Positions 27,873 through 36,846 are shown, counted from the whole stretch's first letter. The stretch is DNA of 63,891 bases, filler included, from Octopus bimaculoides (GCF_001194135.2; 7 parts of 6 records of this genome joined end to end with filler, not necessarily neighbours in it); one strand, 5' to 3'. The notes: generated by a model not told the origin, from the sequence alone. A program made the numbers and translations.

Positions 27873-27916
<44 letters not shown>

Positions 27917-28184
27917 GTATGGATAATGAAAACAACCTGAATAAGAAGAAAAATGATTCTGAGTACAAGAAAAAGTAAGAAAAATATATTTTTTAAATGT
28001 GTTGAAAAAAACATCTCAAGGTGGGGAGGTGTTGTGGCAGACACCACAAGGTGAGAAGTGGGCTGGTCCACTACTAATAAATAGTGAACGGACACAGTCA
28101 GTAGTGTCAGCCAGCGAGGTATGCTGTTAGAGCCAGTCCCACACAGACAACGAAATATGTCGCTATAATGCGGGACATAACAAG

Positions 28185-28990
28185 TAGCAATCGAATTCTG
28201 TTATCCAGAGCACTACATCAGCAGCGGAGAATGAATTTTTAAAGCATAATTGTTAGAATAAGAACAGGATAGTCAAAGTTAAGGATGCCAATATTATCTG
28301 GTAGTAAAGGCTTCTTGCTTAGAGTGAAAAGCAGATTGTATAAAGCCTGTATACATACAACTGTCACTAGAGAGGAGATGAAAAAGGCTTAAAACAAATG
28401 AAGCCAGGAGGTTCTGCTGGATGGGTGATGTCAGGGAGCGTGGATAACACAGTGTAAAGGATTTAAGAGAAAAATTGGGTATAAGAGGCATCAGTTGAAA
28501 TGCACAAGAGAGAAGACAGTAGTATCGTGTGATGCATATAGATGAGGACAGTTGCATAAAGAAGTGCTTCTTTCTACACCAATTGTGGAAGGAAGCTGTT
28601 AAACAGATAGACCCAGGAGGACATGGCAAAAATTGGTGAGAAATGGTCTTTTGACATTGGGCATTAAAGATAAGATAAAAAAGGACCAGCATTTCTGGCA
28701 GTTTTCTGCACTTCAGAAAACATGTCAATCTAAAGAAAGTCTTGGCCACCCATAAATACAGGCATCTCCTTTACAGTGATGACCCACCATGTCCTCTTGC
28801 AAACACATACACAATGGTGTCACATAAAAGCACCTGTGCCACAACCACTAAAAAGAACCATGCCAGTGTCAATTAAAATCACCTGTGCCAGTGCTACATC
28901 AAGAATATACGAGACAAACGTTCCAACACATGACAAAACTGAGAGCAGACATTGTATGATGATAATAATGGTAAAGATCATGATGAATTA
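28185..28990 (+). mobile_element. Old RTE LINE, 3' part (duplicated intronic copy 1)
   Basis: Relics of KGFLLRVKSRLYKAC, LREKLGIRGIS and RPRRTW, followed by a 3' UTR ending in a (GAT/AAT)n tail. Confidence 0.7.
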
Positions 28991-29121
28991 TTAGCAATTT
29001 TACCACAAACCACTACAAAAATGTAGAGTTTTCAAATTTTAATCTATAAATGAAAAGAAGATACTATGGCTTGGCCAAAATATAATAAACCCAAATAAAT
29101 TCACTGAAAAATAATACTTAC

Positions 29122-29172
29122 GTTTCTAGAGTTTCATCAATTACTCTGTTTCTTTCATTTCTTCTACCATTT
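29122..29172 (-). CDS. Micro-exon A1 (51 nt, phase 2-2): NGRRNERNRVIDETLE
   Basis: ctgtag| ... |gtaagt. Only one frame is open. Confidence 0.6.
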
Positions 29173-29921
29173 CTACAGAATTTAAAATATTGGCCATTAT
29201 TAAATTTCTATTCCATATTTATTTCATACTAGAAAACAAACCAAGTATATTTTAGTACCGTATTTCTTGAGATGCTCAGTGTTTCTTTCAATTAATTTTA
29301 AATATGACAAAGGATTTAATAAAATTTAGTTATTATTAAGCTAGTGTTAGGAACATCAATTGTGACTAATGTTTGGAAGTAGATTTTAATTCAGAACTTT
29401 TGAAAACAAGAAATTTGTACTTCAGAGCAAGAGGCAGTTTCAGATGTTTGGTATCGAACAGGATAAACAGGTCCAACTTTGTTACTCAAAATGAAAATGG
29501 TGAAAATTCAATTAGGAGTTACAATGGACAGTGTGAATAATTTCAGTTTGGTGAAGAGGGAAATCATAATGGAATGAAATGCTCTAACTGTTGTAGCAAA
29601 GAAAGAAGATATGTCTGATAGAGACAACAGTTAAGATTAAGAAATAGTGAGAAACATGTCATCAGTAGAGCAATATTGTAGTTGTATAAATGAAGGTTAA
29701 GCATGTTAAAGACGACATAAGATTTGAAGATCATCAGCTCTCACCATCCCATCTGTTTACTCCAAGAGAAATAATATTTTTAGAACTACAGCATCTGATG
29801 TGGGACTTTCTTTTTTCAAGTCAGCAATGTAAGGAATTTTCCATCATGGGAAGAAAGAAGATTAAAGGTTTTCAACAAAATATATTTAAACCCAATTTAT
29901 TCAATGAAAAGTGTCGCTTAC

Positions 29922-29972
29922 ATTGCTTCACCATCTTGATTTCTTTTCTTTTGACTTTCTCTAACATTTGTC
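29922..29972 (-). CDS. Micro-exon B1 (51 nt, phase 2-2): TNVRESQKKRNQDGEA
   Basis: ttttacttttag| ... |gtaagc. Confidence 0.65.
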
Positions 29973-30059
29973 CTAAAAGTAAAACATGGATTTTATCTTT
30001 TGTTTTTCATTCTAGAATTATTTCACAGAAATAAACAACGTTTTGGAAGTTAAATGTCA

Positions 30060-30915
30060 GAAAATGATTGCATTTTATAGGGAATAAATTACTCAGCAGA
30101 TTAGGAAGAGAGTTGGCCTGGATGAGATGCAGTTCTGTTTCATACCAGGAAGAAACACAACTGGTGCTGTCCCCTTGGTAAGGCAGGAGAAGTATTTATC
30201 CATGAATAAACCATTGTATCTAGCTTGAGCTGGAGTAAGACTTTCAAAAGTAAACCTCTCTCCTTGGCTATTGTGGGCCAAAGAAACCCTTGGACATGAC
30301 TATTATTGCTCCCTCAGTTGGTGGTCAATACTGAAGGTATGGATTGATGAGTTGTTTGAGACCATACAAGCCATGTACAAGCATGCTGTCAATAAGTTGA
30401 AGGTCCTAAATGAGTAAAGCAATGAATTAAGTGTACAAGTAAGCATTCACCAAAGACAAGTTCTTAGCCCATTCTTTTTTTTTTTAATCATAATCCTCAA
30501 GGACATAACAACGGAATTTAAGATTGGTTGCCCTTGCAAACACCTCCAAGACTGATCAATGTTGTATTTTATGTCAGAACTGTTATATACAATGCAGAGG
30601 AAATTTCAGGTGTGGCACCAGGTCAGAAATCATATAAACATAGAATTAATTTAGATGAGAGCAAAATTCTGACGAGGCATAAAATAGAAAAATCACACAT
30701 CCCTTCAGGGGGATGGCCCTGCTCAAAATGTAGGAAAGGTATTGGTAGAAACTCAATACAATGTATCCAGTGCAAGTTCTGCACACACAGAGTGCAGTAG
30801 TAAAATAAATACTAAAAGGTAAAATAAATACTAAAAGGTAAGATAAATACTAAGTATATACAGAGGAGAGACTCCCTCAAATGATTAGGATATCCTTAGA
30901 AGTAGTAATGAAATT
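30060..30915 (+). mobile_element. Old RTE LINE, RT and PHD-like region (copy 2, 3' part deleted)
   Basis: IRKRVGLDEMQFCFIPGRNT, EKYLSMNKPLYLA, HQRQVLSP and PSGGWPCSKCRKGIGRNSIQCIQCKFCTH. Confidence 0.75.
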
Positions 30916-31052
30916 CTATTATTGGAAAATTTACTACAAACCCCTACAAAAATGTAGAGTTTTCAAATTTTAATCTATAAATGAACAGAAAATACTATGG
31001 CTTCAGCAAAATATAATAAACCCAAATAAATTCACTGAGAAATAATACTTAC

Positions 31053-31100
31053 CTTTCTAGAGTTTCATCAATTCCACTGTTTCTTTCATTTCTACCATTT
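31053..31100 (-). CDS. Micro-exon A2 (48 nt, phase 2-2): NGRNERNSGIDETLE
   Basis: gtgtag| ... AG|gtaagt. Confidence 0.6.
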
Positions 31101-31491
31101 CTACACAATTTAAAATATTAACCATTATTATATATTTATTCCATATTTATTTCATACTAGAAAACAAAGCAAGTATATTTTACTACTGAAATTTAAAACA
31201 GGTCCAACTTTATTGCTCAAACTGAAAATGGTAGACATTCAATCAGGACTTGCAATTTGGTGGAAAGGGAGATCATCGAGGACAGAAATGCTATAGTTGT
31301 TGTAGATGAAATGTCTCATAGACACAACAGTTAAGATTAGGAATTCGTAGGAAGCTTGTAAAGAGTAGAGCAATATTGTAGTTGTATAAATAAAGGTCAG
31401 GCATGATAAAGATGACATAAAATATGAAGATTCCCAGCTCTCACCATACCATCTGGTTACTCCAGGAGAAATCATATTCTTAGAACTACAC

Positions 31492-32455
31492 TGTGTGTGG
31501 CAGATATGCAGATAAAATAAATAGTAAGTATATAGAGTAAAGACTCCCTAAAATGATCAGGGTATCTTTAGAAGTAGTAATCAAATTCTGTTATCCAGGC
31601 CATCCTGTTAGCAATGGAGAACGAATTTTTGAAGCATTATTGTTAGAATAAGAACAGGATAGTCAAATTTAATGGTGCCAGTATCTGGTAGTAAAACACC
31701 TCGCCCTAAGGGTGAAAAGCAGATTGAATATTGGCTGTGTACATACAACTAGGCAACATGACAGTGAAACATGAATTGTCACATGACATGCAAAAGGCTT
31801 AAAACAAAAGAAGCCAGGAGGTTCAACTGGTTGGTCATGTCAGTGTGCATGTATGATAAAATTGGGTATAAGAGGCATCAGTTGTAGTGCACAGAAGAGA
31901 AAACTGACAATATGTGATGCATATCGATGAGAATAGCTGCATAAAGAAGTGTTTATTTCTACTCCAATTGTGAGCGAAAACTTGGGAAAAAGTGGTGAGA
32001 AACAGTCTTCAGACACTGGGGTTTACAGGGATGATAAGAATGACCAAGATTTCTAGCAGTTTTTTGCACTTCCGAAGACACATCAAGCTAAGGAAAATCT
32101 TGGCCTCCCATACATACAGACATGCCCTTTACAGCTATGACCCACTACATCCCTGACTTGCAAGCACATACACAATGCCCCCATAAACACACCTGTTCCA
32201 GAACCACTAGAAATGACATTGCCAGTGTCAATTAAAAGCACCCATGCCATTACCACATAAAAACACCTGTGCCAATGCCACATCAAGAATATATGAGATA
32301 CTCTATAAAGTGGTTAGCATTAGAAAGATCCAGCTATAGGACCCATAAGGAAACAGACAATTGCAGCCTGGACAGACCTCCAGCTGGCGAGCTCCTGTCA
32401 AATATTGCACCACATCAAAAATTTGAGAATGGGCATTAACTGGTGATAATGATGA
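31492..32455 (+). mobile_element. Old RTE LINE, 3' part (copy 3, 5' part deleted)
   Basis: Colinear with 28185-28990 and 34230-35875. Confidence 0.7.
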
Positions 32456-32746
32456 NNNNNNNNNNNNNNNNNNNNNNNNNNNNNNNNNNNNNNNNNNNNN
32501 NNNNNNNNNNNNNNNNNNNNNNNNNNNNNNNNNNNNNNNNNNNNNNNNNNNNNNNNNNNNNNNNNNNNNNNNNNNNNNNNNNNNNNNNNNNNNNNNNNNN
32601 NNNNNNNNNNNNNNNNNNNNNNNNNNNNNNNNNNNNNNNNNNNNNNNNNNNNNNNNNNNNNNNNNNNNNNNNNNNNGAACTGAAAATACTATGACTTCAG
32701 CAAAATATAATAAACCCAAATAAATTCACTGAAAAATAATACTTAC

Positions 32747-32794
32747 CTTTCTAGAGTTTCATCAATTCCCCTGTTTCTTTCATTTATACCATTT
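32747..32794 (-). CDS. Micro-exon A3 (48 nt, phase 2-2): NGINERNRGIDETLE
   Basis: ctgtag| ... AG|gtaagt. Confidence 0.6.
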
Positions 32795-33316
32795 CTACAG
32801 AATTTGAAATATTAGCCATTATTATATCTTTATTCCATATTTATTTCATATTATAAAACTAAGCAAGTATATTTTAGGTTTAAATTTAAACAGGTCCAGC
32901 CTTGTTACTCAAAATCAAAACGGTGAAAATTCAATCACGAGTTGCAAGGAACAGTGTGAATAATTAGTTTGGTGGGAAAGGAGATCATTGAGAAAAGAAA
33001 GATGAAATGCCTGGTAGAGACAAAATTCAGATTAGGAATTCGTGGGAAGCTTCTAATCAATAGAGCAATATTGTAGTTGTATAAATGAAGGTTAGGCATG
33101 ATAAAGATGACATATGATTTAAAGATTTTCAGCTCTCACCATCCCACCTGGTTACTCCAGGACTAATAATATTGTAAGATCTACAGTATCTGTAATCAGA
33201 CTTTGTTTTATCAAGTCAGCAATGTAAGGAATTTTCCATCATGGGAAGAAAGAAGATTGAAGATTTTCAACAAAATATATTTAAACCCAATTTATTCAAT
33301 GAAAAGTGTTACTTAC

Positions 33317-33367
33317 ATTGCTTCAGCATCTTGATTTCTTTTCTTTTGACTTTCTCTAACATTTGTC
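33317..33367 (-). CDS. Micro-exon B2 (51 nt, phase 2-2): TNVRESQKKRNQDAEA
   Basis: gtttttcttttag| ... |gtaagt. Confidence 0.65.
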
Positions 33368-33469
33368 CTAAAAGAAAAACATAGATTATAACATTTTTTG
33401 TTTCTTATTCTAGAATTATTTCACAGAAATAGACACCATTTTGAAAATGAAATATAGTCAGAACATGAT

Positions 33470-35875
33470 TGTTTTTTATGGGGAATAAATTGCTCAACTG
33501 ATTGGGAAGAGATTTAAACTGGATGAGATGCAATTCTATATTGTGCCATAAAGAAACACAACTAGTGCTGTCCTCGTGCTAAGGCAATTGCAGGAGAAGT
33601 ATGTAGCCCTGAATAAACCATTGTATCTGGCTGTTATAGAACTGGAAAAAGACTTTCAAGTAGAAGCCTCTATCCTTGCCTATTGTCGACCTAAGAAAGC
33701 CTTGGACAGATGCTATTGCCCCTTCATCTGGTGGTCAATGCAGAAGGCATGGATTGATGAGTTGTTTGAGACCATACAAGCCATGTACAAGCATGATCTC
33801 AATATGTTGATGCAATGAGTATAGCAATGAATTTAGTGTACAGCTGAGCATTCACCAAAGACAAGTCCCACCCCGTCTTCTTTTTCTCATAGTCCTCAAG
33901 GACATAGCAGAGGAATTTAAGTCTGGTGCCCTTAGCAAGACCTGAAATGCTGATCAATTTTTTTCTCATAGCTGAACTGTTAGATGAAATCAAGAGGAAA
34001 TTTCAGGTCAGAAATCAAATAGCCTTATCATTAATTTAGCTAAGAGCAAAATTCTAATGAACTGTACACAGACAAATCACAAATCCCTTCAGGGAGATAG
34101 CCTTGCTCAAAATGTAGAAAAGGTGTTGGTAGAAACTCCATACAGTGTATCCAGTGCAAGTTCTGTACACATAAATGGTGCAGTAGTATCATGGGAAAAT
34201 GAACAATTCAAGTAGACATTCTGTGTGACAGATATGCAGGTAAAATAATTACTAAGTGTGTACAGAGGAGAGACTCCCTCAAATGACAGGGGTAATTCTC
34301 AGAAATAGTAATCAAATTCTGTTATCCAGGCCACCATGTTAGCAGTGGAGGACGAATTTTGGAAGCATAATTGCTAGAATAAGAACAGGCCGATCAAAGT
34401 TAAGGGTACCAGCATTTTCTGGGAGTAAAGGGTGTCTCCCTTGGAGTCATCATCATCATCATCATCATCATTTAACGTCCGCTTTCCATGCTAGCATGGG
34501 TTGGACGATTTGACTGAGGACTGGTGAAACCGGATGGCAACACCAGGCTCCAATCTAATTTGGCAGAGTTTCTACAGCTGGATGCCCTTCCTAACGCCAA
34601 CCACTCAGAGAGTGTAGTGGGTGCTTTTACGTGTCACCCGCACGAAAACGATACATTTATAAATTCGACCTAAAATGCATATACATATAATACATAGACA
34701 TTTTTTTTTTATATTTATAAAATATAAATATATATATATATAAAAGTATATGTAAACACAACCCATTTTTATGTNNNNNNNNNNNNNNNNNNNNNNNNNN
34801 NNNNNNNNNNNNNNNNNNNNNNNNNNNNNNNNNNNNNNNNNNNNNNNNNNNNNNNNNNNNNNNNNNNNNNNNNNNNNNNNNNNNNNNNNNNNNNNNNNNN
34901 NNNNNNNNNNNNNNNNNNNNNNNNNNNNNNNNNNNNNNNNNNNNNNNNNNNNNNNNNNNNNNNNNNNNNNNNNNNNNNNNNNNNNNNNNNNNNNNNNNNN
35001 NNNNNNNNNNNNNNNNNNNNNNNNNNNNNNNNNNNNNNNNNNNNNNNNNNNNNNNNNNNNNNNNNNNNNNNNNNNNNNNNNNNNNNNNGATATGAACCCA
35101 AATTAGGCAATCATCAGAAAAGCACATTTTATGATGCCTGTGTACATACAGCTAGGCTACATGGCAATGAAACATGAACTGTCACTAGAGATGACATGCA
35201 AATGGCTTGAAACAAATGAAGCTAAGAGGTTCTCCTGGATGGGTAATGTGAATGTATGACAGAGTGGATGCATATGAAGTGTTTGCTGGACAGCATATTG
35301 TGTGATGCATATGAAGTGCTTGAAGGGCAGCTACATAAAGAAGTGTTTGTTTCTACTGTAAGATGGGTAGATCCCAGAAGACATGGGAAAAAGTGGTGAG
35401 AAATGGTTTTCAGACATTAGGCTTTATAGAGAAAATAGTAAAGAACCAAGATTTCTGGCAGTTTTCTGCCCTTCAGAAGACATGTGAAGCTTAGTAAAGT
35501 CTTGACCATCCGTACATACAAGCATGCCCTTTACAGCTATGCCCCACCATGTCCTCTCTCTGCTGAGACATCCCTGTCTTGCAAGCATATACACGATGGT
35601 GTCACATAAAGGCACCCGTTCCAGAACCACTAGAAATGATCATGCCAGTGTCAATTACAAGCACCCATGCTGTTGCCACATAAAAGCACCTGTAACAGTG
35701 CCACATCAAGAATACATGAGACACTCCATAAAGTGGTTGCCATTGAGAAAGGCATCCAGCTATAGAAACTATAATAAAATAAACAATTGGAGCCTGGACA
35801 GTCCTCCAGCTCCTGTCAAACATTCCAGCACATAACAAAATTGAGAGCAGACATTAAATGATGATAATAATGTGA
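33470..35875 (+). mobile_element. Old RTE LINE (copy 4, most complete; interrupted by a young insertion and a gap)
   Basis: ORF 33576-33818 LRQLQEKYVALNKPLYLAVIELEKDF..IWWSMQKAWIDELFETIQAMYK, PHD-like cysteine cluster, 3' UTR and (GAT)n tail. Confidence 0.8.
34448..34649 (-). mobile_element. Young 5'-truncated RTE 3' UTR (or RTE-tailed SINE) with (GAT)n tail
   Basis: Near-identical reverse complement of 44178-44364 and 46905-47084. Confidence 0.85.
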
Positions 35876-36022
35876 TGATCATGATGAATTATTTGCTATT
35901 TTACCACAAACCCTCACAAGAATGGAGAGTTTTCAAATTTCGATGTAGAAATGAACAGAAAATACTATGACTTCAGCAAAATATAATAAATCCAAATAAA
36001 TTCACTGAAAAATAATACTTAC

Positions 36023-36067
36023 TTTTCTTGAGTTTCATCAATTCTTCTGCTTCTTTCTCTACCATTT
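36023..36067 (-). CDS. Micro-exon A4 (45 nt, phase 2-2): NGRERSRRIDETQE
   Basis: ctgtag| ... |gtaagt. Confidence 0.6.
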
Positions 36068-36303
36068 CTACAGAATGTAAAATATTATATTGTATTTTTA
36101 TATTATTATATTATATATGTGTTTATATATATTATTTTTTCCATATTATCATATTTTTATTCCATATTTATTTCGTAACAATGAGCGAAAATGAGATGAT
36201 TCTAAAGCATGAAAAAGCTATCGTCTGCTCACGATTCGTAAAGTAATACTTCAGTTATTTCCGGTTAATCTCACTTTTAAACGATGTTTGTTAAATACGT
36301 AGT

Positions 36304-36685
36304 GGAGGTGCAATGGCCCAATGGTTAGGGCAGCGGATTCGCGGTCTTAGGATCGCGGTTTCGATTCCCAGACTGGGCGTTGTGAGTGTTTATTGAGCGA
36401 AAACACCCAAAGCCCCACGAGGCTCCGGCAGTGGATGGTGGCGAACCCTGCTGTACTCTTTCACCACAACTTTCTCTCACTCTTTTTCTCTGTTTTTGCT
36501 GTACCTGTATTTCAAAGGGCCAGCCTTGTCACACTGTGTCACGCTGAATATCCCTGAAAACTACGTCAAGGGTACACGTGTCTGTGGAGTGCTCACCCAC
36601 TTGCATGTTAATTTCATGAGCAGGCTGTTCCGATGATCCGATCAACTGGAACCCTCGACGTCGTAAGCGACGGAGTGCTGAAGAA
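36304..36685 (+). mobile_element. Full-length tRNA-derived SINE (head type A) inserted in a Helitron-associated repeat
   Basis: A box TGGCCCAATGG and B box GTTTCGATTCC. Flanked by ATACGTA at 36295-36301 and 36691-36697 (TSD-like). The flanks rejoin into the sequence seen at 38390-38550. Confidence 0.85.
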
Positions 36686-36815
36686 GTTACATACGTATGT
36701 GTTTGTGTACGTCTGTGAGTGTATGTGAGAGAAAGGAAATCACACATGTATATATATATATATATATATTGATAAGAAGGACAACAAAAGAAAGTGACCT
36801 CGATATTACGTAAAT

Positions 36816-36846
<31 letters not shown>

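What the first reader, a model, noticed from the sequence alone, without database searches (positions are those of the whole stretch)
29122..36067. Array of six symmetric phase 2-2 micro-exons (two types) on the minus strand
Seen: four A exons (45, 48, 48, 51 nt) and two B exons (51, 51 nt), each bounded by AG and GTAAG(T/C). All lengths are multiples of 3, the A copies differ only by 3-nt indels, and the same phase 2-2 frame is stop-free in all six (the only open frame in A1 and A2). Spliced order A4-B2-A3-A2-B1-A1 gives NGRERSRRIDETQEK-TNVRESQKKRNQDAEAI-NGINERNRGIDETLER-NGRNERNSGIDETLER-TNVRESQKKRNQDGEAI-NGRRNERNRVIDETLET. Known: symmetric micro-exons can be skipped without frameshift, as in schistosome micro-exon genes. 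Inference: a modular, combinatorially spliced charged repeat region, invisible to the ORF track. Caveat: the A acceptors have weak polypyrimidine tracts.
Basis: partly seen in the sequence, partly recalled or inferred. Interest (0 to 1): 0.85.

Follow-up and report, generated by a model that had tools for sequence, protein, structure and literature searches.

The report
Repeated exon-like islands in octopus-type DNA
Six short exon-like segments sit in a 3.4-kb block of DNA that was copied in tandem; they and their flanks have changed much less than the junk DNA around them, so they probably do something, most likely as spliced exons, but nothing shows that they encode protein.

Summary
On the minus strand there are four A segments (51, 48, 48 and 45 nt) and two B segments (51 nt each). 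Each is bounded by AG and GTAAG, and the same frame is open in all six. They are not six independent events. They are copies inside a roughly 3.4-kb tandem repeat whose unit is A, a 0.75-kb spacer, B, then a dead 5'-truncated LINE on the opposite strand. A and B are themselves old paralogs. The same pattern (AG...GTAAG, length a multiple of 3, an open frame) occurs 10 times by chance on the other strand of the piece.

What is more than chance is conservation. Units differ by 16-22% in the LINE and spacer, but by 2% in the B exon, 4.5-5% in the 107-110 nt after its donor, and 3-13% in A and its flanks. The best 160-column window is exactly B plus its donor flank (permutation P<=0.0014).

The flanks are at least as conserved as the A segments. 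About 9 of 10 substitutions inside the segments change the amino acid. No protein relative was found, and no transcript data could be reached.

Verdict: these are probably unannotated alternative cassette exons constrained at the RNA level. A protein-coding, combinatorial role is unproven. Both assembly gaps lie in putative introns, so the copy number is uncertain.

The parts
29122..29172 (-). A1 exon-like segment, 51 nt, ctgtag|...|GTAAGT
29922..29972 (-). B1 exon-like segment, 51 nt, cttttag|...|GTAAGC
31053..31100 (-). A2 exon-like segment, 48 nt (its unit has lost B and the first part of the LINE)
32747..32794 (-). A3 exon-like segment, 48 nt
33317..33367 (-). B2 exon-like segment, 51 nt
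36023..36067 (-). A4 exon-like segment, 45 nt; the repeat array ends about 110 nt upstream of it (minus-strand sense)
29005..29121 (-). Conserved donor-side flank of A1. Equivalent flanks: 30936-31052 (A2), 32677-32746 (A3, cut by gap 1) and about 35906-36022 (A4). The first 70 nt are 90-97% identical among copies.
29815..29921 (-). Conserved donor-side flank of B1 (equivalent flank of B2: 33210-33316), 95% identical. It shares the motif TTTTCAkTGAAT..GGGTTTAwwATATTTTGyTGAA with the A flanks.
29745..29759 (-). Third exon-like 15-nt segment 'C' in the spacer (ag|TAAACAGATGGGATG|GTGAGA), also at 31445-31459 and 33140-33154.
30088..30920 (+). Dead 5'-truncated LINE (reverse transcriptase plus PHD-type finger family), antisense to the exon-like segments. 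Other copies or parts: about 27990-28975, 31493-32455, 33489-34431 and 35120-35890. Used here as the neutral yardstick.
29256..29467 (.). Repeat insertion present only in the unit-1 spacer
   Evidence: 83% identical to O. vulgaris L001:4342-4558
34438..34650 (-). SINE insertion present only in the unit-2 LINE, next to gap 2
32456..32676 (.). Assembly gap 1, in the putative intron 70 nt after the A3 donor; flanks collinear with the other units
34775..35088 (.). Assembly gap 2, inside an insertion within the LINE; the LINE is collinear across it

Best explanation
A genomic segment of about 3.4 kb was duplicated in tandem at least three times. Read on the minus strand, the segment is A, an intron holding an antisense dead LINE, B, then a 0.75-kb intron. 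One unit was later shortened by a deletion or unequal crossover.

A and B are old paralogs of one module: an acceptor, 45-51 nt of purine-rich sequence, GTAAGT, and a U-rich, GGG-containing stretch of about 70-110 nt. I think the modules are cassette exons of an unannotated minus-strand transcript, kept intact by selection on splicing. The signals under selection would be the consensus 5' splice sites, purine-rich exonic enhancers that compensate for the weak A acceptors, and enhancer elements in the intron just after the donor.

Because all the exons are symmetric and in the same phase, any subset could be included without changing the frame. If the transcript is coding, the exons would add a charged, low-complexity linker of variable length whose exact residues matter little. 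They could equally be non-coding exons (UTR or lncRNA).

Shown: the segments, the repeat architecture, the A/B paralogy and the conservation islands. Inferred: transcription, splicing, the enhancer roles and any coding.
For: - Exact AG and GTAAG boundaries, lengths that are multiples of 3, and one common open frame in all six copies.
- Repeat architecture with LINE homology only at 30088-30800, 33489-34352 and the matching 3' parts.
- Neutral yardstick: LINE copies are 78-82% identical and spacers 83-84%. Against that, the B exon is 98%, the B donor flank 95.5%, the A exons 87-96% and the A donor flanks 90-97%.
- In every pair of units the top-scoring conserved segments are the A block and the B block.
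- The best 160-column window in unit 1 versus unit 2 is 29816-29975, with 5 mismatches. Permutation gives P<0.0002 using all columns and P=0.0014 using only non-LINE columns.
- A and B align with the donor in register, the acceptor shifted by exactly 3 nt and no indel in the exon body. The two indels among the A copies are 3 nt each.
- Insertions (the LINE ends, and the repeat at 29256-29467) stay at least about 45-145 nt away from the exon-like segments.
- The LINE is antisense to the putative transcript.
Against: - No transcript, junction or ortholog data could be reached.
- The peptide has no relative at E<=10 in a database that does hold Octopus vulgaris proteins, and no Pfam match.
- Substitutions inside the segments are almost all non-synonymous and fall at codon position 2, so there is no purifying selection on the protein.
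- The A acceptors lack a polypyrimidine tract.
- Comparable pseudo-exons arise by chance on the other strand.
- Two shorter islands of 87-91% identity (cores 92-94%) also occur inside the dead LINE. Local gene conversion or rate variation therefore exists in this array and could contribute.
- No upstream or downstream conventional exon was identified in the 16-kb piece.
Confidence: 0.45

Rival explanations
1. Non-genic tandem repeat. The AG...GTAAG-bounded open segments are chance pseudo-exons multiplied by duplication. The conservation islands come from patchy gene conversion between units, or from selection on something that is not an exon, such as a regulatory DNA element or an unknown small RNA.
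For: - The pattern occurs 10 times by chance on the plus strand.
- There are effectively only 1-2 independent modules.
- Conservation is highest in the flank rather than in the segment for A.
- Amino-acid changes are unconstrained.
- Islands of 87-91% identity (cores 92-94%) also exist in the dead LINE.
- The array shows unequal-crossover products: the A2 unit lacks B.
- No protein or transcript support.
Against: - Conversion would have to hit the same two ~200-nt blocks independently in every pair of units.
- The conserved flank motif is shared between A and B across a much older duplication in which the exon bodies fell to about 55% identity. That points to long-term selection rather than recent homogenisation.
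- There is no Rfam match and no significant RNA structure for a small-RNA reading.
Confidence: 0.33
2. The segments are protein-coding micro-exons that are combinatorially spliced to give a family of charged repeat proteins, like the schistosome micro-exon genes.
For: - Symmetric exons of equal phase with an open common frame.
- Both indels among the A copies and the acceptor shift between A and B are multiples of 3.
- Fast amino-acid change next to conserved flanks resembles the high dN/dS reported for micro-exon genes (PMC4350168).
Against:
- Both indels are 3 nt, and at least one (AGA in AGAAGA) looks like trinucleotide slippage.
- No signal-peptide exon or terminal exon was found.
- No homolog.
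- With only about 10 substitutions, dN/dS cannot be told apart from neutrality.
- Micro-exon genes appear restricted to platyhelminths (PMC4350168).
Confidence: 0.2
3. The A and B modules are part of a mobile element, either the 5' part of the adjacent LINE or another repeat family. The array would then be head-to-tail element copies, and the islands would reflect constraint within the element.
For: - The A block begins about 25 nt after the LINE's microsatellite-like tail in each unit.
- LINEs with microsatellite-like tails can form tandem arrays (own knowledge).
- The best-conserved spots in the LINE coincide with conserved protein motifs.
Against: - A profile of the 166 N-terminal positions of 42 family members matches only its last ~25 positions (141-166), at 30088-30162 and 33486-33563, and nothing in A-spacer-B on either strand.
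- tblastn gives no collinear hit there.
- The plus-strand ORF across B has no relative among 1.84 billion representative proteins.
- A 21-kb Octopus vulgaris locus with three LINE fragments, five SINE copies and other shared repeats has no A/B module.
- There are no extra copies elsewhere in the piece.
- The LINE copies share the same truncation point and the same internal peculiarity, as expected for duplicates of one insertion.
Confidence: 0.07

Closest known systems
Tandemly duplicated alternative exons (cassette or mutually exclusive arrays, for example in Dscam or myosin heavy chain, and the symmetric charged PEVK exons of titin); own knowledge
   Same: Adjacent paralogous exons of equal phase and near-equal length. 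Splice sites are intact in all copies. Intron flanks are conserved. The charged low-complexity peptide would act as a length-variable linker.
   Different: No transcript evidence here. The copies multiplied by duplication of a whole 3.4-kb block that includes a LINE. No docking/selector complementarity and no significant RNA structure were found.
Schistosome micro-exon genes (MEGs) (PMC4350168, PMC10526429)
   Same: Short symmetric exons (MEG range 3-81 bp) separated by long introns of up to 5 kb. The surroundings are rich in transposable elements. The amino-acid sequence changes fast.
   Different: MEGs encode secreted proteins with a signal peptide, are known only from platyhelminths, and have documented exon-skipping transcripts. 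None of this is shown here, and there is no sequence similarity.
Conserved intronic flanks of alternatively spliced exons, with U-rich and G-run intronic splicing enhancers downstream of 5' splice sites; own knowledge
   Same: About 70-110 nt after each donor is conserved as well as the exon or better. This stretch contains a U-run at +7 to +16 and a GGG run.
   Different: Here conservation is measured between paralogous copies in one genome, not between species. No binding factor or enhancer activity was tested.

Membership tests
Schistosome-type micro-exon genes | Most of the coding region consists of very small symmetric exons (3-81 bp) separated by long introns | tested here: inconclusive
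   Six segments of 45-51 nt, all multiples of 3 and in the same phase, with 0.75-2.7 kb between them. Whether they are coding exons of a gene is unknown.
Schistosome-type micro-exon genes | The product has a signal peptide and is secreted or membrane-anchored | not testable with these tools
   No first exon was identified in the 16-kb piece. The peptide itself is charged and has no hydrophobic stretch.
Schistosome-type micro-exon genes | Transcripts show exon skipping that yields protein variants | not testable with these tools
   No transcriptome of this species could be reached. Look-ups of five window ORFs found no record.
Schistosome-type micro-exon genes | Sequence membership in a described MEG family, or platyhelminth origin | tested here: not met
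   No hit at E<=10 among 5.8 billion proteins and no Pfam family. The repeats match Octopus vulgaris DNA.
Tandemly duplicated alternative exons | Neighbouring exons are homologous and have the same phase and similar length | tested here: met
   The A copies are 87-96% identical and the B copies 98%. A and B align over about 170 columns with the donor in register.
Tandemly duplicated alternative exons | Splice signals are intact in every copy | tested here: met
   AG and GTAAG are present in all six copies. The A acceptors are weak.
Tandemly duplicated alternative exons | The exon and flanking intron are conserved above the neutral background | tested here: met
   Mismatch rate is 2-8% in the exons and 5-11% in their flanks (5-7% on the donor side), against 17% in the spacer and 19% in the LINE. 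Window permutation gives P<=0.0014.
Tandemly duplicated alternative exons | The exons are observed in spliced transcripts | not testable with these tools
   No RNA data are available.
LINE of the reverse transcriptase + PHD-finger family (as part of the element) | The A-spacer-B region is homologous to the element's N-terminal coding region | tested here: not met
   A profile of 42 N-termini matches only from 30088 and 33486 onward. tblastn gives nothing collinear. O. vulgaris LINE copies lack A/B.
Known structured RNA families (snoRNA, miRNA and others) | Match to an Rfam covariance model, or a stable conserved fold | tested here: not met
   No Rfam match in the A/B blocks at E<=1. Folding z-scores range from -1.2 to +2.4.

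The most novel reading that the evidence does not exclude
An octopus gene built like a schistosome micro-exon gene: an expandable tandem array of symmetric micro-exons, multiplied by LINE-containing block duplication and kept spliceable by strongly conserved intronic enhancers. Combinatorial inclusion of these exons would generate a family of fast-evolving charged proteins. This would be the first such system outside flatworms.
Probability: 0.1. Interest if true: 0.65.

Novelty: new member of a known kind. Interest (0 to 1): 0.3.

Why it matters
If the islands are real cassette exons, the locus would show two things. First, block duplication of an exon pair together with an embedded LINE can expand a modular, frame-neutral exon array in a cephalopod. 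Second, it would point to a gene that standard annotation misses. The strongly conserved 70-110 nt after each donor would then be candidate intronic splicing enhancers in a group whose splicing code is poorly known. If they are not exons, the locus is an ordinary tandem repeat with two small conserved elements of unknown role. It would also be a useful warning that splice-like, open, multiple-of-3 segments copied by duplication can mimic an exon array.

Tried and rejected
- Protein search with the 98-aa joined peptide found nothing at E<=10. Pfam also found nothing.
I used that search instead on the plus-strand ORF across B, which gave 0 hits.
- Exact-protein look-ups of five window ORFs, meant to find other assemblies or transcripts of this locus, found nothing on record.
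- Two metagenome scans, one for the conserved flank motif and one for the A exon plus donor, gave 0 matches.
- Rfam and tRNA scans found nothing in the A/B blocks.
- I tested whether exon and flank form a hairpin, such as an RNA-editing or selector structure. Folding z-scores were not significant, and no matching inverted repeat was found.
- I considered a box C/D snoRNA reading of A (UGAUGA in the exon, CUGA in the flank). I rejected it by eye: there is no terminal stem and B lacks both boxes.
- I tested whether A-spacer-B is the 5' part of the LINE. This was rejected.
- CpG decay inflating LINE divergence was rejected. The LINE copies hold only 2-3 CpG, and transitions are about equal to transversions.
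- Literature searches for cephalopod micro-exon genes or tandem exon duplication in octopus found nothing relevant.
Full report
**1. What is in the sequence**

The piece (27873-44077) is AT-rich animal DNA full of repeats. One SINE in it is 79-91% identical to five copies in a 21-kb Octopus vulgaris locus that I fetched for comparison. The source is therefore an octopus or a close relative (inference).

On the minus strand the six segments are exactly as described:
- A1: 29122-29172, 51 nt
- B1: 29922-29972, 51 nt
- A2: 31053-31100, 48 nt
- A3: 32747-32794, 48 nt
- B2: 33317-33367, 51 nt
- A4: 36023-36067, 45 nt

Each follows an AG and precedes GTAAGT (GTAAGC in B1). That frame is the only open one in A1-A3. 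A4 and both B copies have two open frames.

Two details need correcting or confirming. The A copies also differ at seven substitution sites, not only by indels. The B acceptors are better, at 0.65-0.75.

**2. Architecture**

The segments are not six independent events. They lie in a tandem repeat with a period of about 3.4 kb and a 1.7-kb sub-period.

Read on the plus strand, one unit is:
- the A block,
- a spacer of about 0.75 kb,
- the B block,
- a 5'-truncated, frameshifted LINE of the reverse transcriptase + PHD-finger family.

The LINE homology is at 30088-30794, 33489-34352, 28243-28353 and 31493-31741 (tblastn; family found). The LINE ends in a degenerate (ATG)n tail about 25 nt before the next A block. 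The LINE is therefore antisense to the exon-like segments.

Later changes to individual units:
- The A2 unit is a shortened unit that lost B and the first LINE part.
- Unit 1 gained a repeat insertion at 29256-29467.
- Unit 2 gained a SINE at 34438-34650.

The array ends about 110 nt beyond A4 and runs to the left edge of the piece.

A and B are themselves paralogs. They align over about 170 columns with the donor in register, the acceptor displaced by exactly 3 nt and no indel in the exon body. The exon bodies are only about 55% identical. The first ~70 intron bases after the donor are about 70-85% identical and share the motif TTTTCAkTGAAT..GGGTTTAwwATATTTTGyTGAA.

**3. The assembly gaps**

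Gap 1 (32456-32676) begins 70 nt after the A3 donor. Its two sides are collinear with the other two units, which have about 82 nt at that place. Gap 2 (34775-35088) lies within an insertion in the unit-2 LINE, and the LINE sequence resumes at the matching point on the far side.

Neither gap touches an exon-like segment, so frame is not at issue. Tandem arrays often collapse in assembly, so hidden extra units cannot be excluded. The count of four A and two B copies, and their order, are provisional.

**4. Is it more than chance?**

The bare pattern is not. With the same rules (AG, 30-60 nt, a multiple of 3, at least one open frame, GTAAG), the plus strand of the piece has 10 hits, several of them inside the dead LINE. 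A purine-rich 48-mer has roughly an even chance of one open frame (my estimate from composition). Duplication explains the repetition.

The conservation profile is more than chance.
- Between units the LINE is 78-82% identical and the spacer 83-84%.
- The B exon is 98% and the 110 nt after its donor 95.5%. The next 190 nt fall to 79.5%.
- The A exons are 87-96% and their first 70 intron bases 90-97%.
- In every pairwise comparison of units, the two best-scoring conserved segments are the A block (about 29005-29255) and the B block (about 29666-30033, core 29815-29990). These score 83-186, against at most 53 for any LINE segment.
- In unit 1 versus unit 2, the 160-column window with the fewest mismatches is 29816-29975, which is B plus its donor flank. 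It has 5 mismatches. None of 5000 permutations of all columns matches this, and the P value is 0.0014 when only non-LINE columns are permuted.
- CpG decay does not explain the contrast. The LINE copies hold 2-3 CpG, and transitions are about equal to transversions.

**5. What kind of constraint?**

The constraint does not look like selection on a peptide. Within A, the variable sites give R/I, N/S, R/S, V/G/R and L/Q changes and three different junction codons. There is one synonymous change (AGA/AGG).

The intron after the donor is as conserved as the A exon or more. Between A and B it is clearly better conserved than the exon. This fits constraint on RNA-level signals. By my own knowledge of splicing, those signals would be:
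- consensus 5' splice sites,
- purine-rich (75-80% purine) exonic enhancers,
- U-runs and a GGG run just downstream of the donor.

Conserved flanks of about 100 nt and lengths that are multiples of 3 are classical marks of alternatively spliced cassette exons (own knowledge).

**6. Alternatives tested**

Part of the LINE?
- A profile of the 166 N-terminal positions of 42 family members matches only its last ~25 positions, at 30088-30162 and 33486-33563. It matches nothing in A-spacer-B on either strand.
- tblastn gives no collinear hits there.
- The O. vulgaris locus, with three LINE fragments, has no A/B module.

Another protein on the plus strand?
- The 114-aa ORF across B has no relative among 1.84 billion representatives and no Pfam match.

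A structured RNA?
- There is no Rfam match in the blocks, no tRNA, and folding z-scores range from -1.2 to +2.4.

A dispersed repeat?
- There are no further copies in the piece and none in the O. vulgaris sample. Two metagenome scans were empty, as expected.

Gene conversion?
- This cannot be excluded. Two smaller islands occur in the dead LINE (87-91% identical in the segment scan, cores of 92-94% in 50-nt windows), and the array shows an unequal-crossover product.
- Conversion would have to strike the same two blocks in every pair of units. It also does not explain the flank motif shared across the much older A/B split.

**7. External evidence**

The joined peptide has no relative at E<=10 among 5.8 billion proteins. 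That database does include Octopus vulgaris annotation (P0118), so no annotated protein there contains these exons. Micro-exons are commonly missed by annotation, so this counts only moderately. No transcript resource for this species could be reached. Literature searches found no cephalopod micro-exon gene or comparable array.

**8. Comparison with known systems**

The locus works most like tandemly duplicated, symmetric alternative exons. It has three of their sequence-level hallmarks: homologous neighbours of equal phase, intact splice signals, and conserved flanks. The fourth hallmark, transcripts, is untestable here.

It resembles schistosome micro-exon genes in exon size (3-81 bp in those genes), symmetry, long introns, repeat-rich surroundings and fast amino-acid change (PMC10526429, PMC4350168). 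The defining secreted product with a signal peptide and the documented skipping isoforms are untested. Sequence membership is not met, and that family appears restricted to flatworms. I therefore do not file it there.

**9. Verdict**

- Most likely (about 0.45): unannotated cassette exons held by RNA-level constraint, with coding status open.
- Main rival (about 0.33): non-exonic conserved patches or conversion tracts in a non-genic tandem repeat.
- A mobile-element origin: about 0.07.
- Interest is modest (0.3) until RNA evidence exists.

Noticed in passing
29745-29759, 31445-31459, 33140-33154 (minus strand): A third exon-like 15-nt segment sits in each spacer. It has a good pyrimidine tract, AG and GTGAGA, and is conserved in all three spacers.
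   Followed up: partly
about 27990-28975, 30088-30920, 31493-32455, 33489-34431, 35120-35890 (plus strand): Dead, 5'-truncated copies of a LINE of the reverse transcriptase + PHD-finger family, 35-52% identical (significant tblastn matches) to proteins from cnidarians, bivalves, amphioxus and Octopus vulgaris. All copies share an extra ~16-residue stretch after the LEKAFD motif, consistent with duplication of a single insertion.
   Followed up: yes
34438-34650 (minus orientation): A SINE with an (ATG)n tail is inserted only in unit 2. Its 3' end resembles the LINE's 3' end. Five copies, 79-91% identical, occur in a 21-kb Octopus vulgaris locus.
   Followed up: partly
36303-36690: A SINE-like element with a tRNA-like head (ARAGORN calls no tRNA) is inserted, apparently with a short target duplication (by eye, from the sequence), into a repeat that recurs at 36190-36300, 38380-38497 and 40400-40515.
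   Followed up: no
38220-38519 and 40238-40537: A 300-nt direct repeat that is 99% identical, far younger than the A/B array. It could be a recent duplication or an assembly artefact.
   Followed up: no
37609-37902 and 37938-38231 (minus strand): Two paralogous 97-aa ORFs rich in R and E (QRRNEIREE.RL motif), 1.5-2.2 kb upstream of A4 on the same strand. Pfam gives nothing significant. They may be a transposon remnant, and no link to the A/B segments is shown.
   Followed up: partly
39200-39275 / 39339-39414: An inverted repeat (76-nt arms, 88% complementary) whose inner parts are TTAGGG-like telomeric repeats facing CCCTAA repeats. It lies next to a mariner-like transposase remnant at about 39560-39880, identified by eye; Pfam was not significant.
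   Followed up: no
30323-30397 and 30698-30772: Two short stretches inside the dead LINE are 92-94% identical between units, against about 80% elsewhere. They coincide with conserved protein motifs (WIDELFETIQAMY and the zinc finger). This is unexplained: possibly gene-conversion patches or chance.
   Followed up: partly
29690-30034 (plus strand): A 114-aa ORF runs antisense across the B block, and its frame is also largely open in unit 2. It has no relative among 1.84 billion representative proteins.
   Followed up: yes
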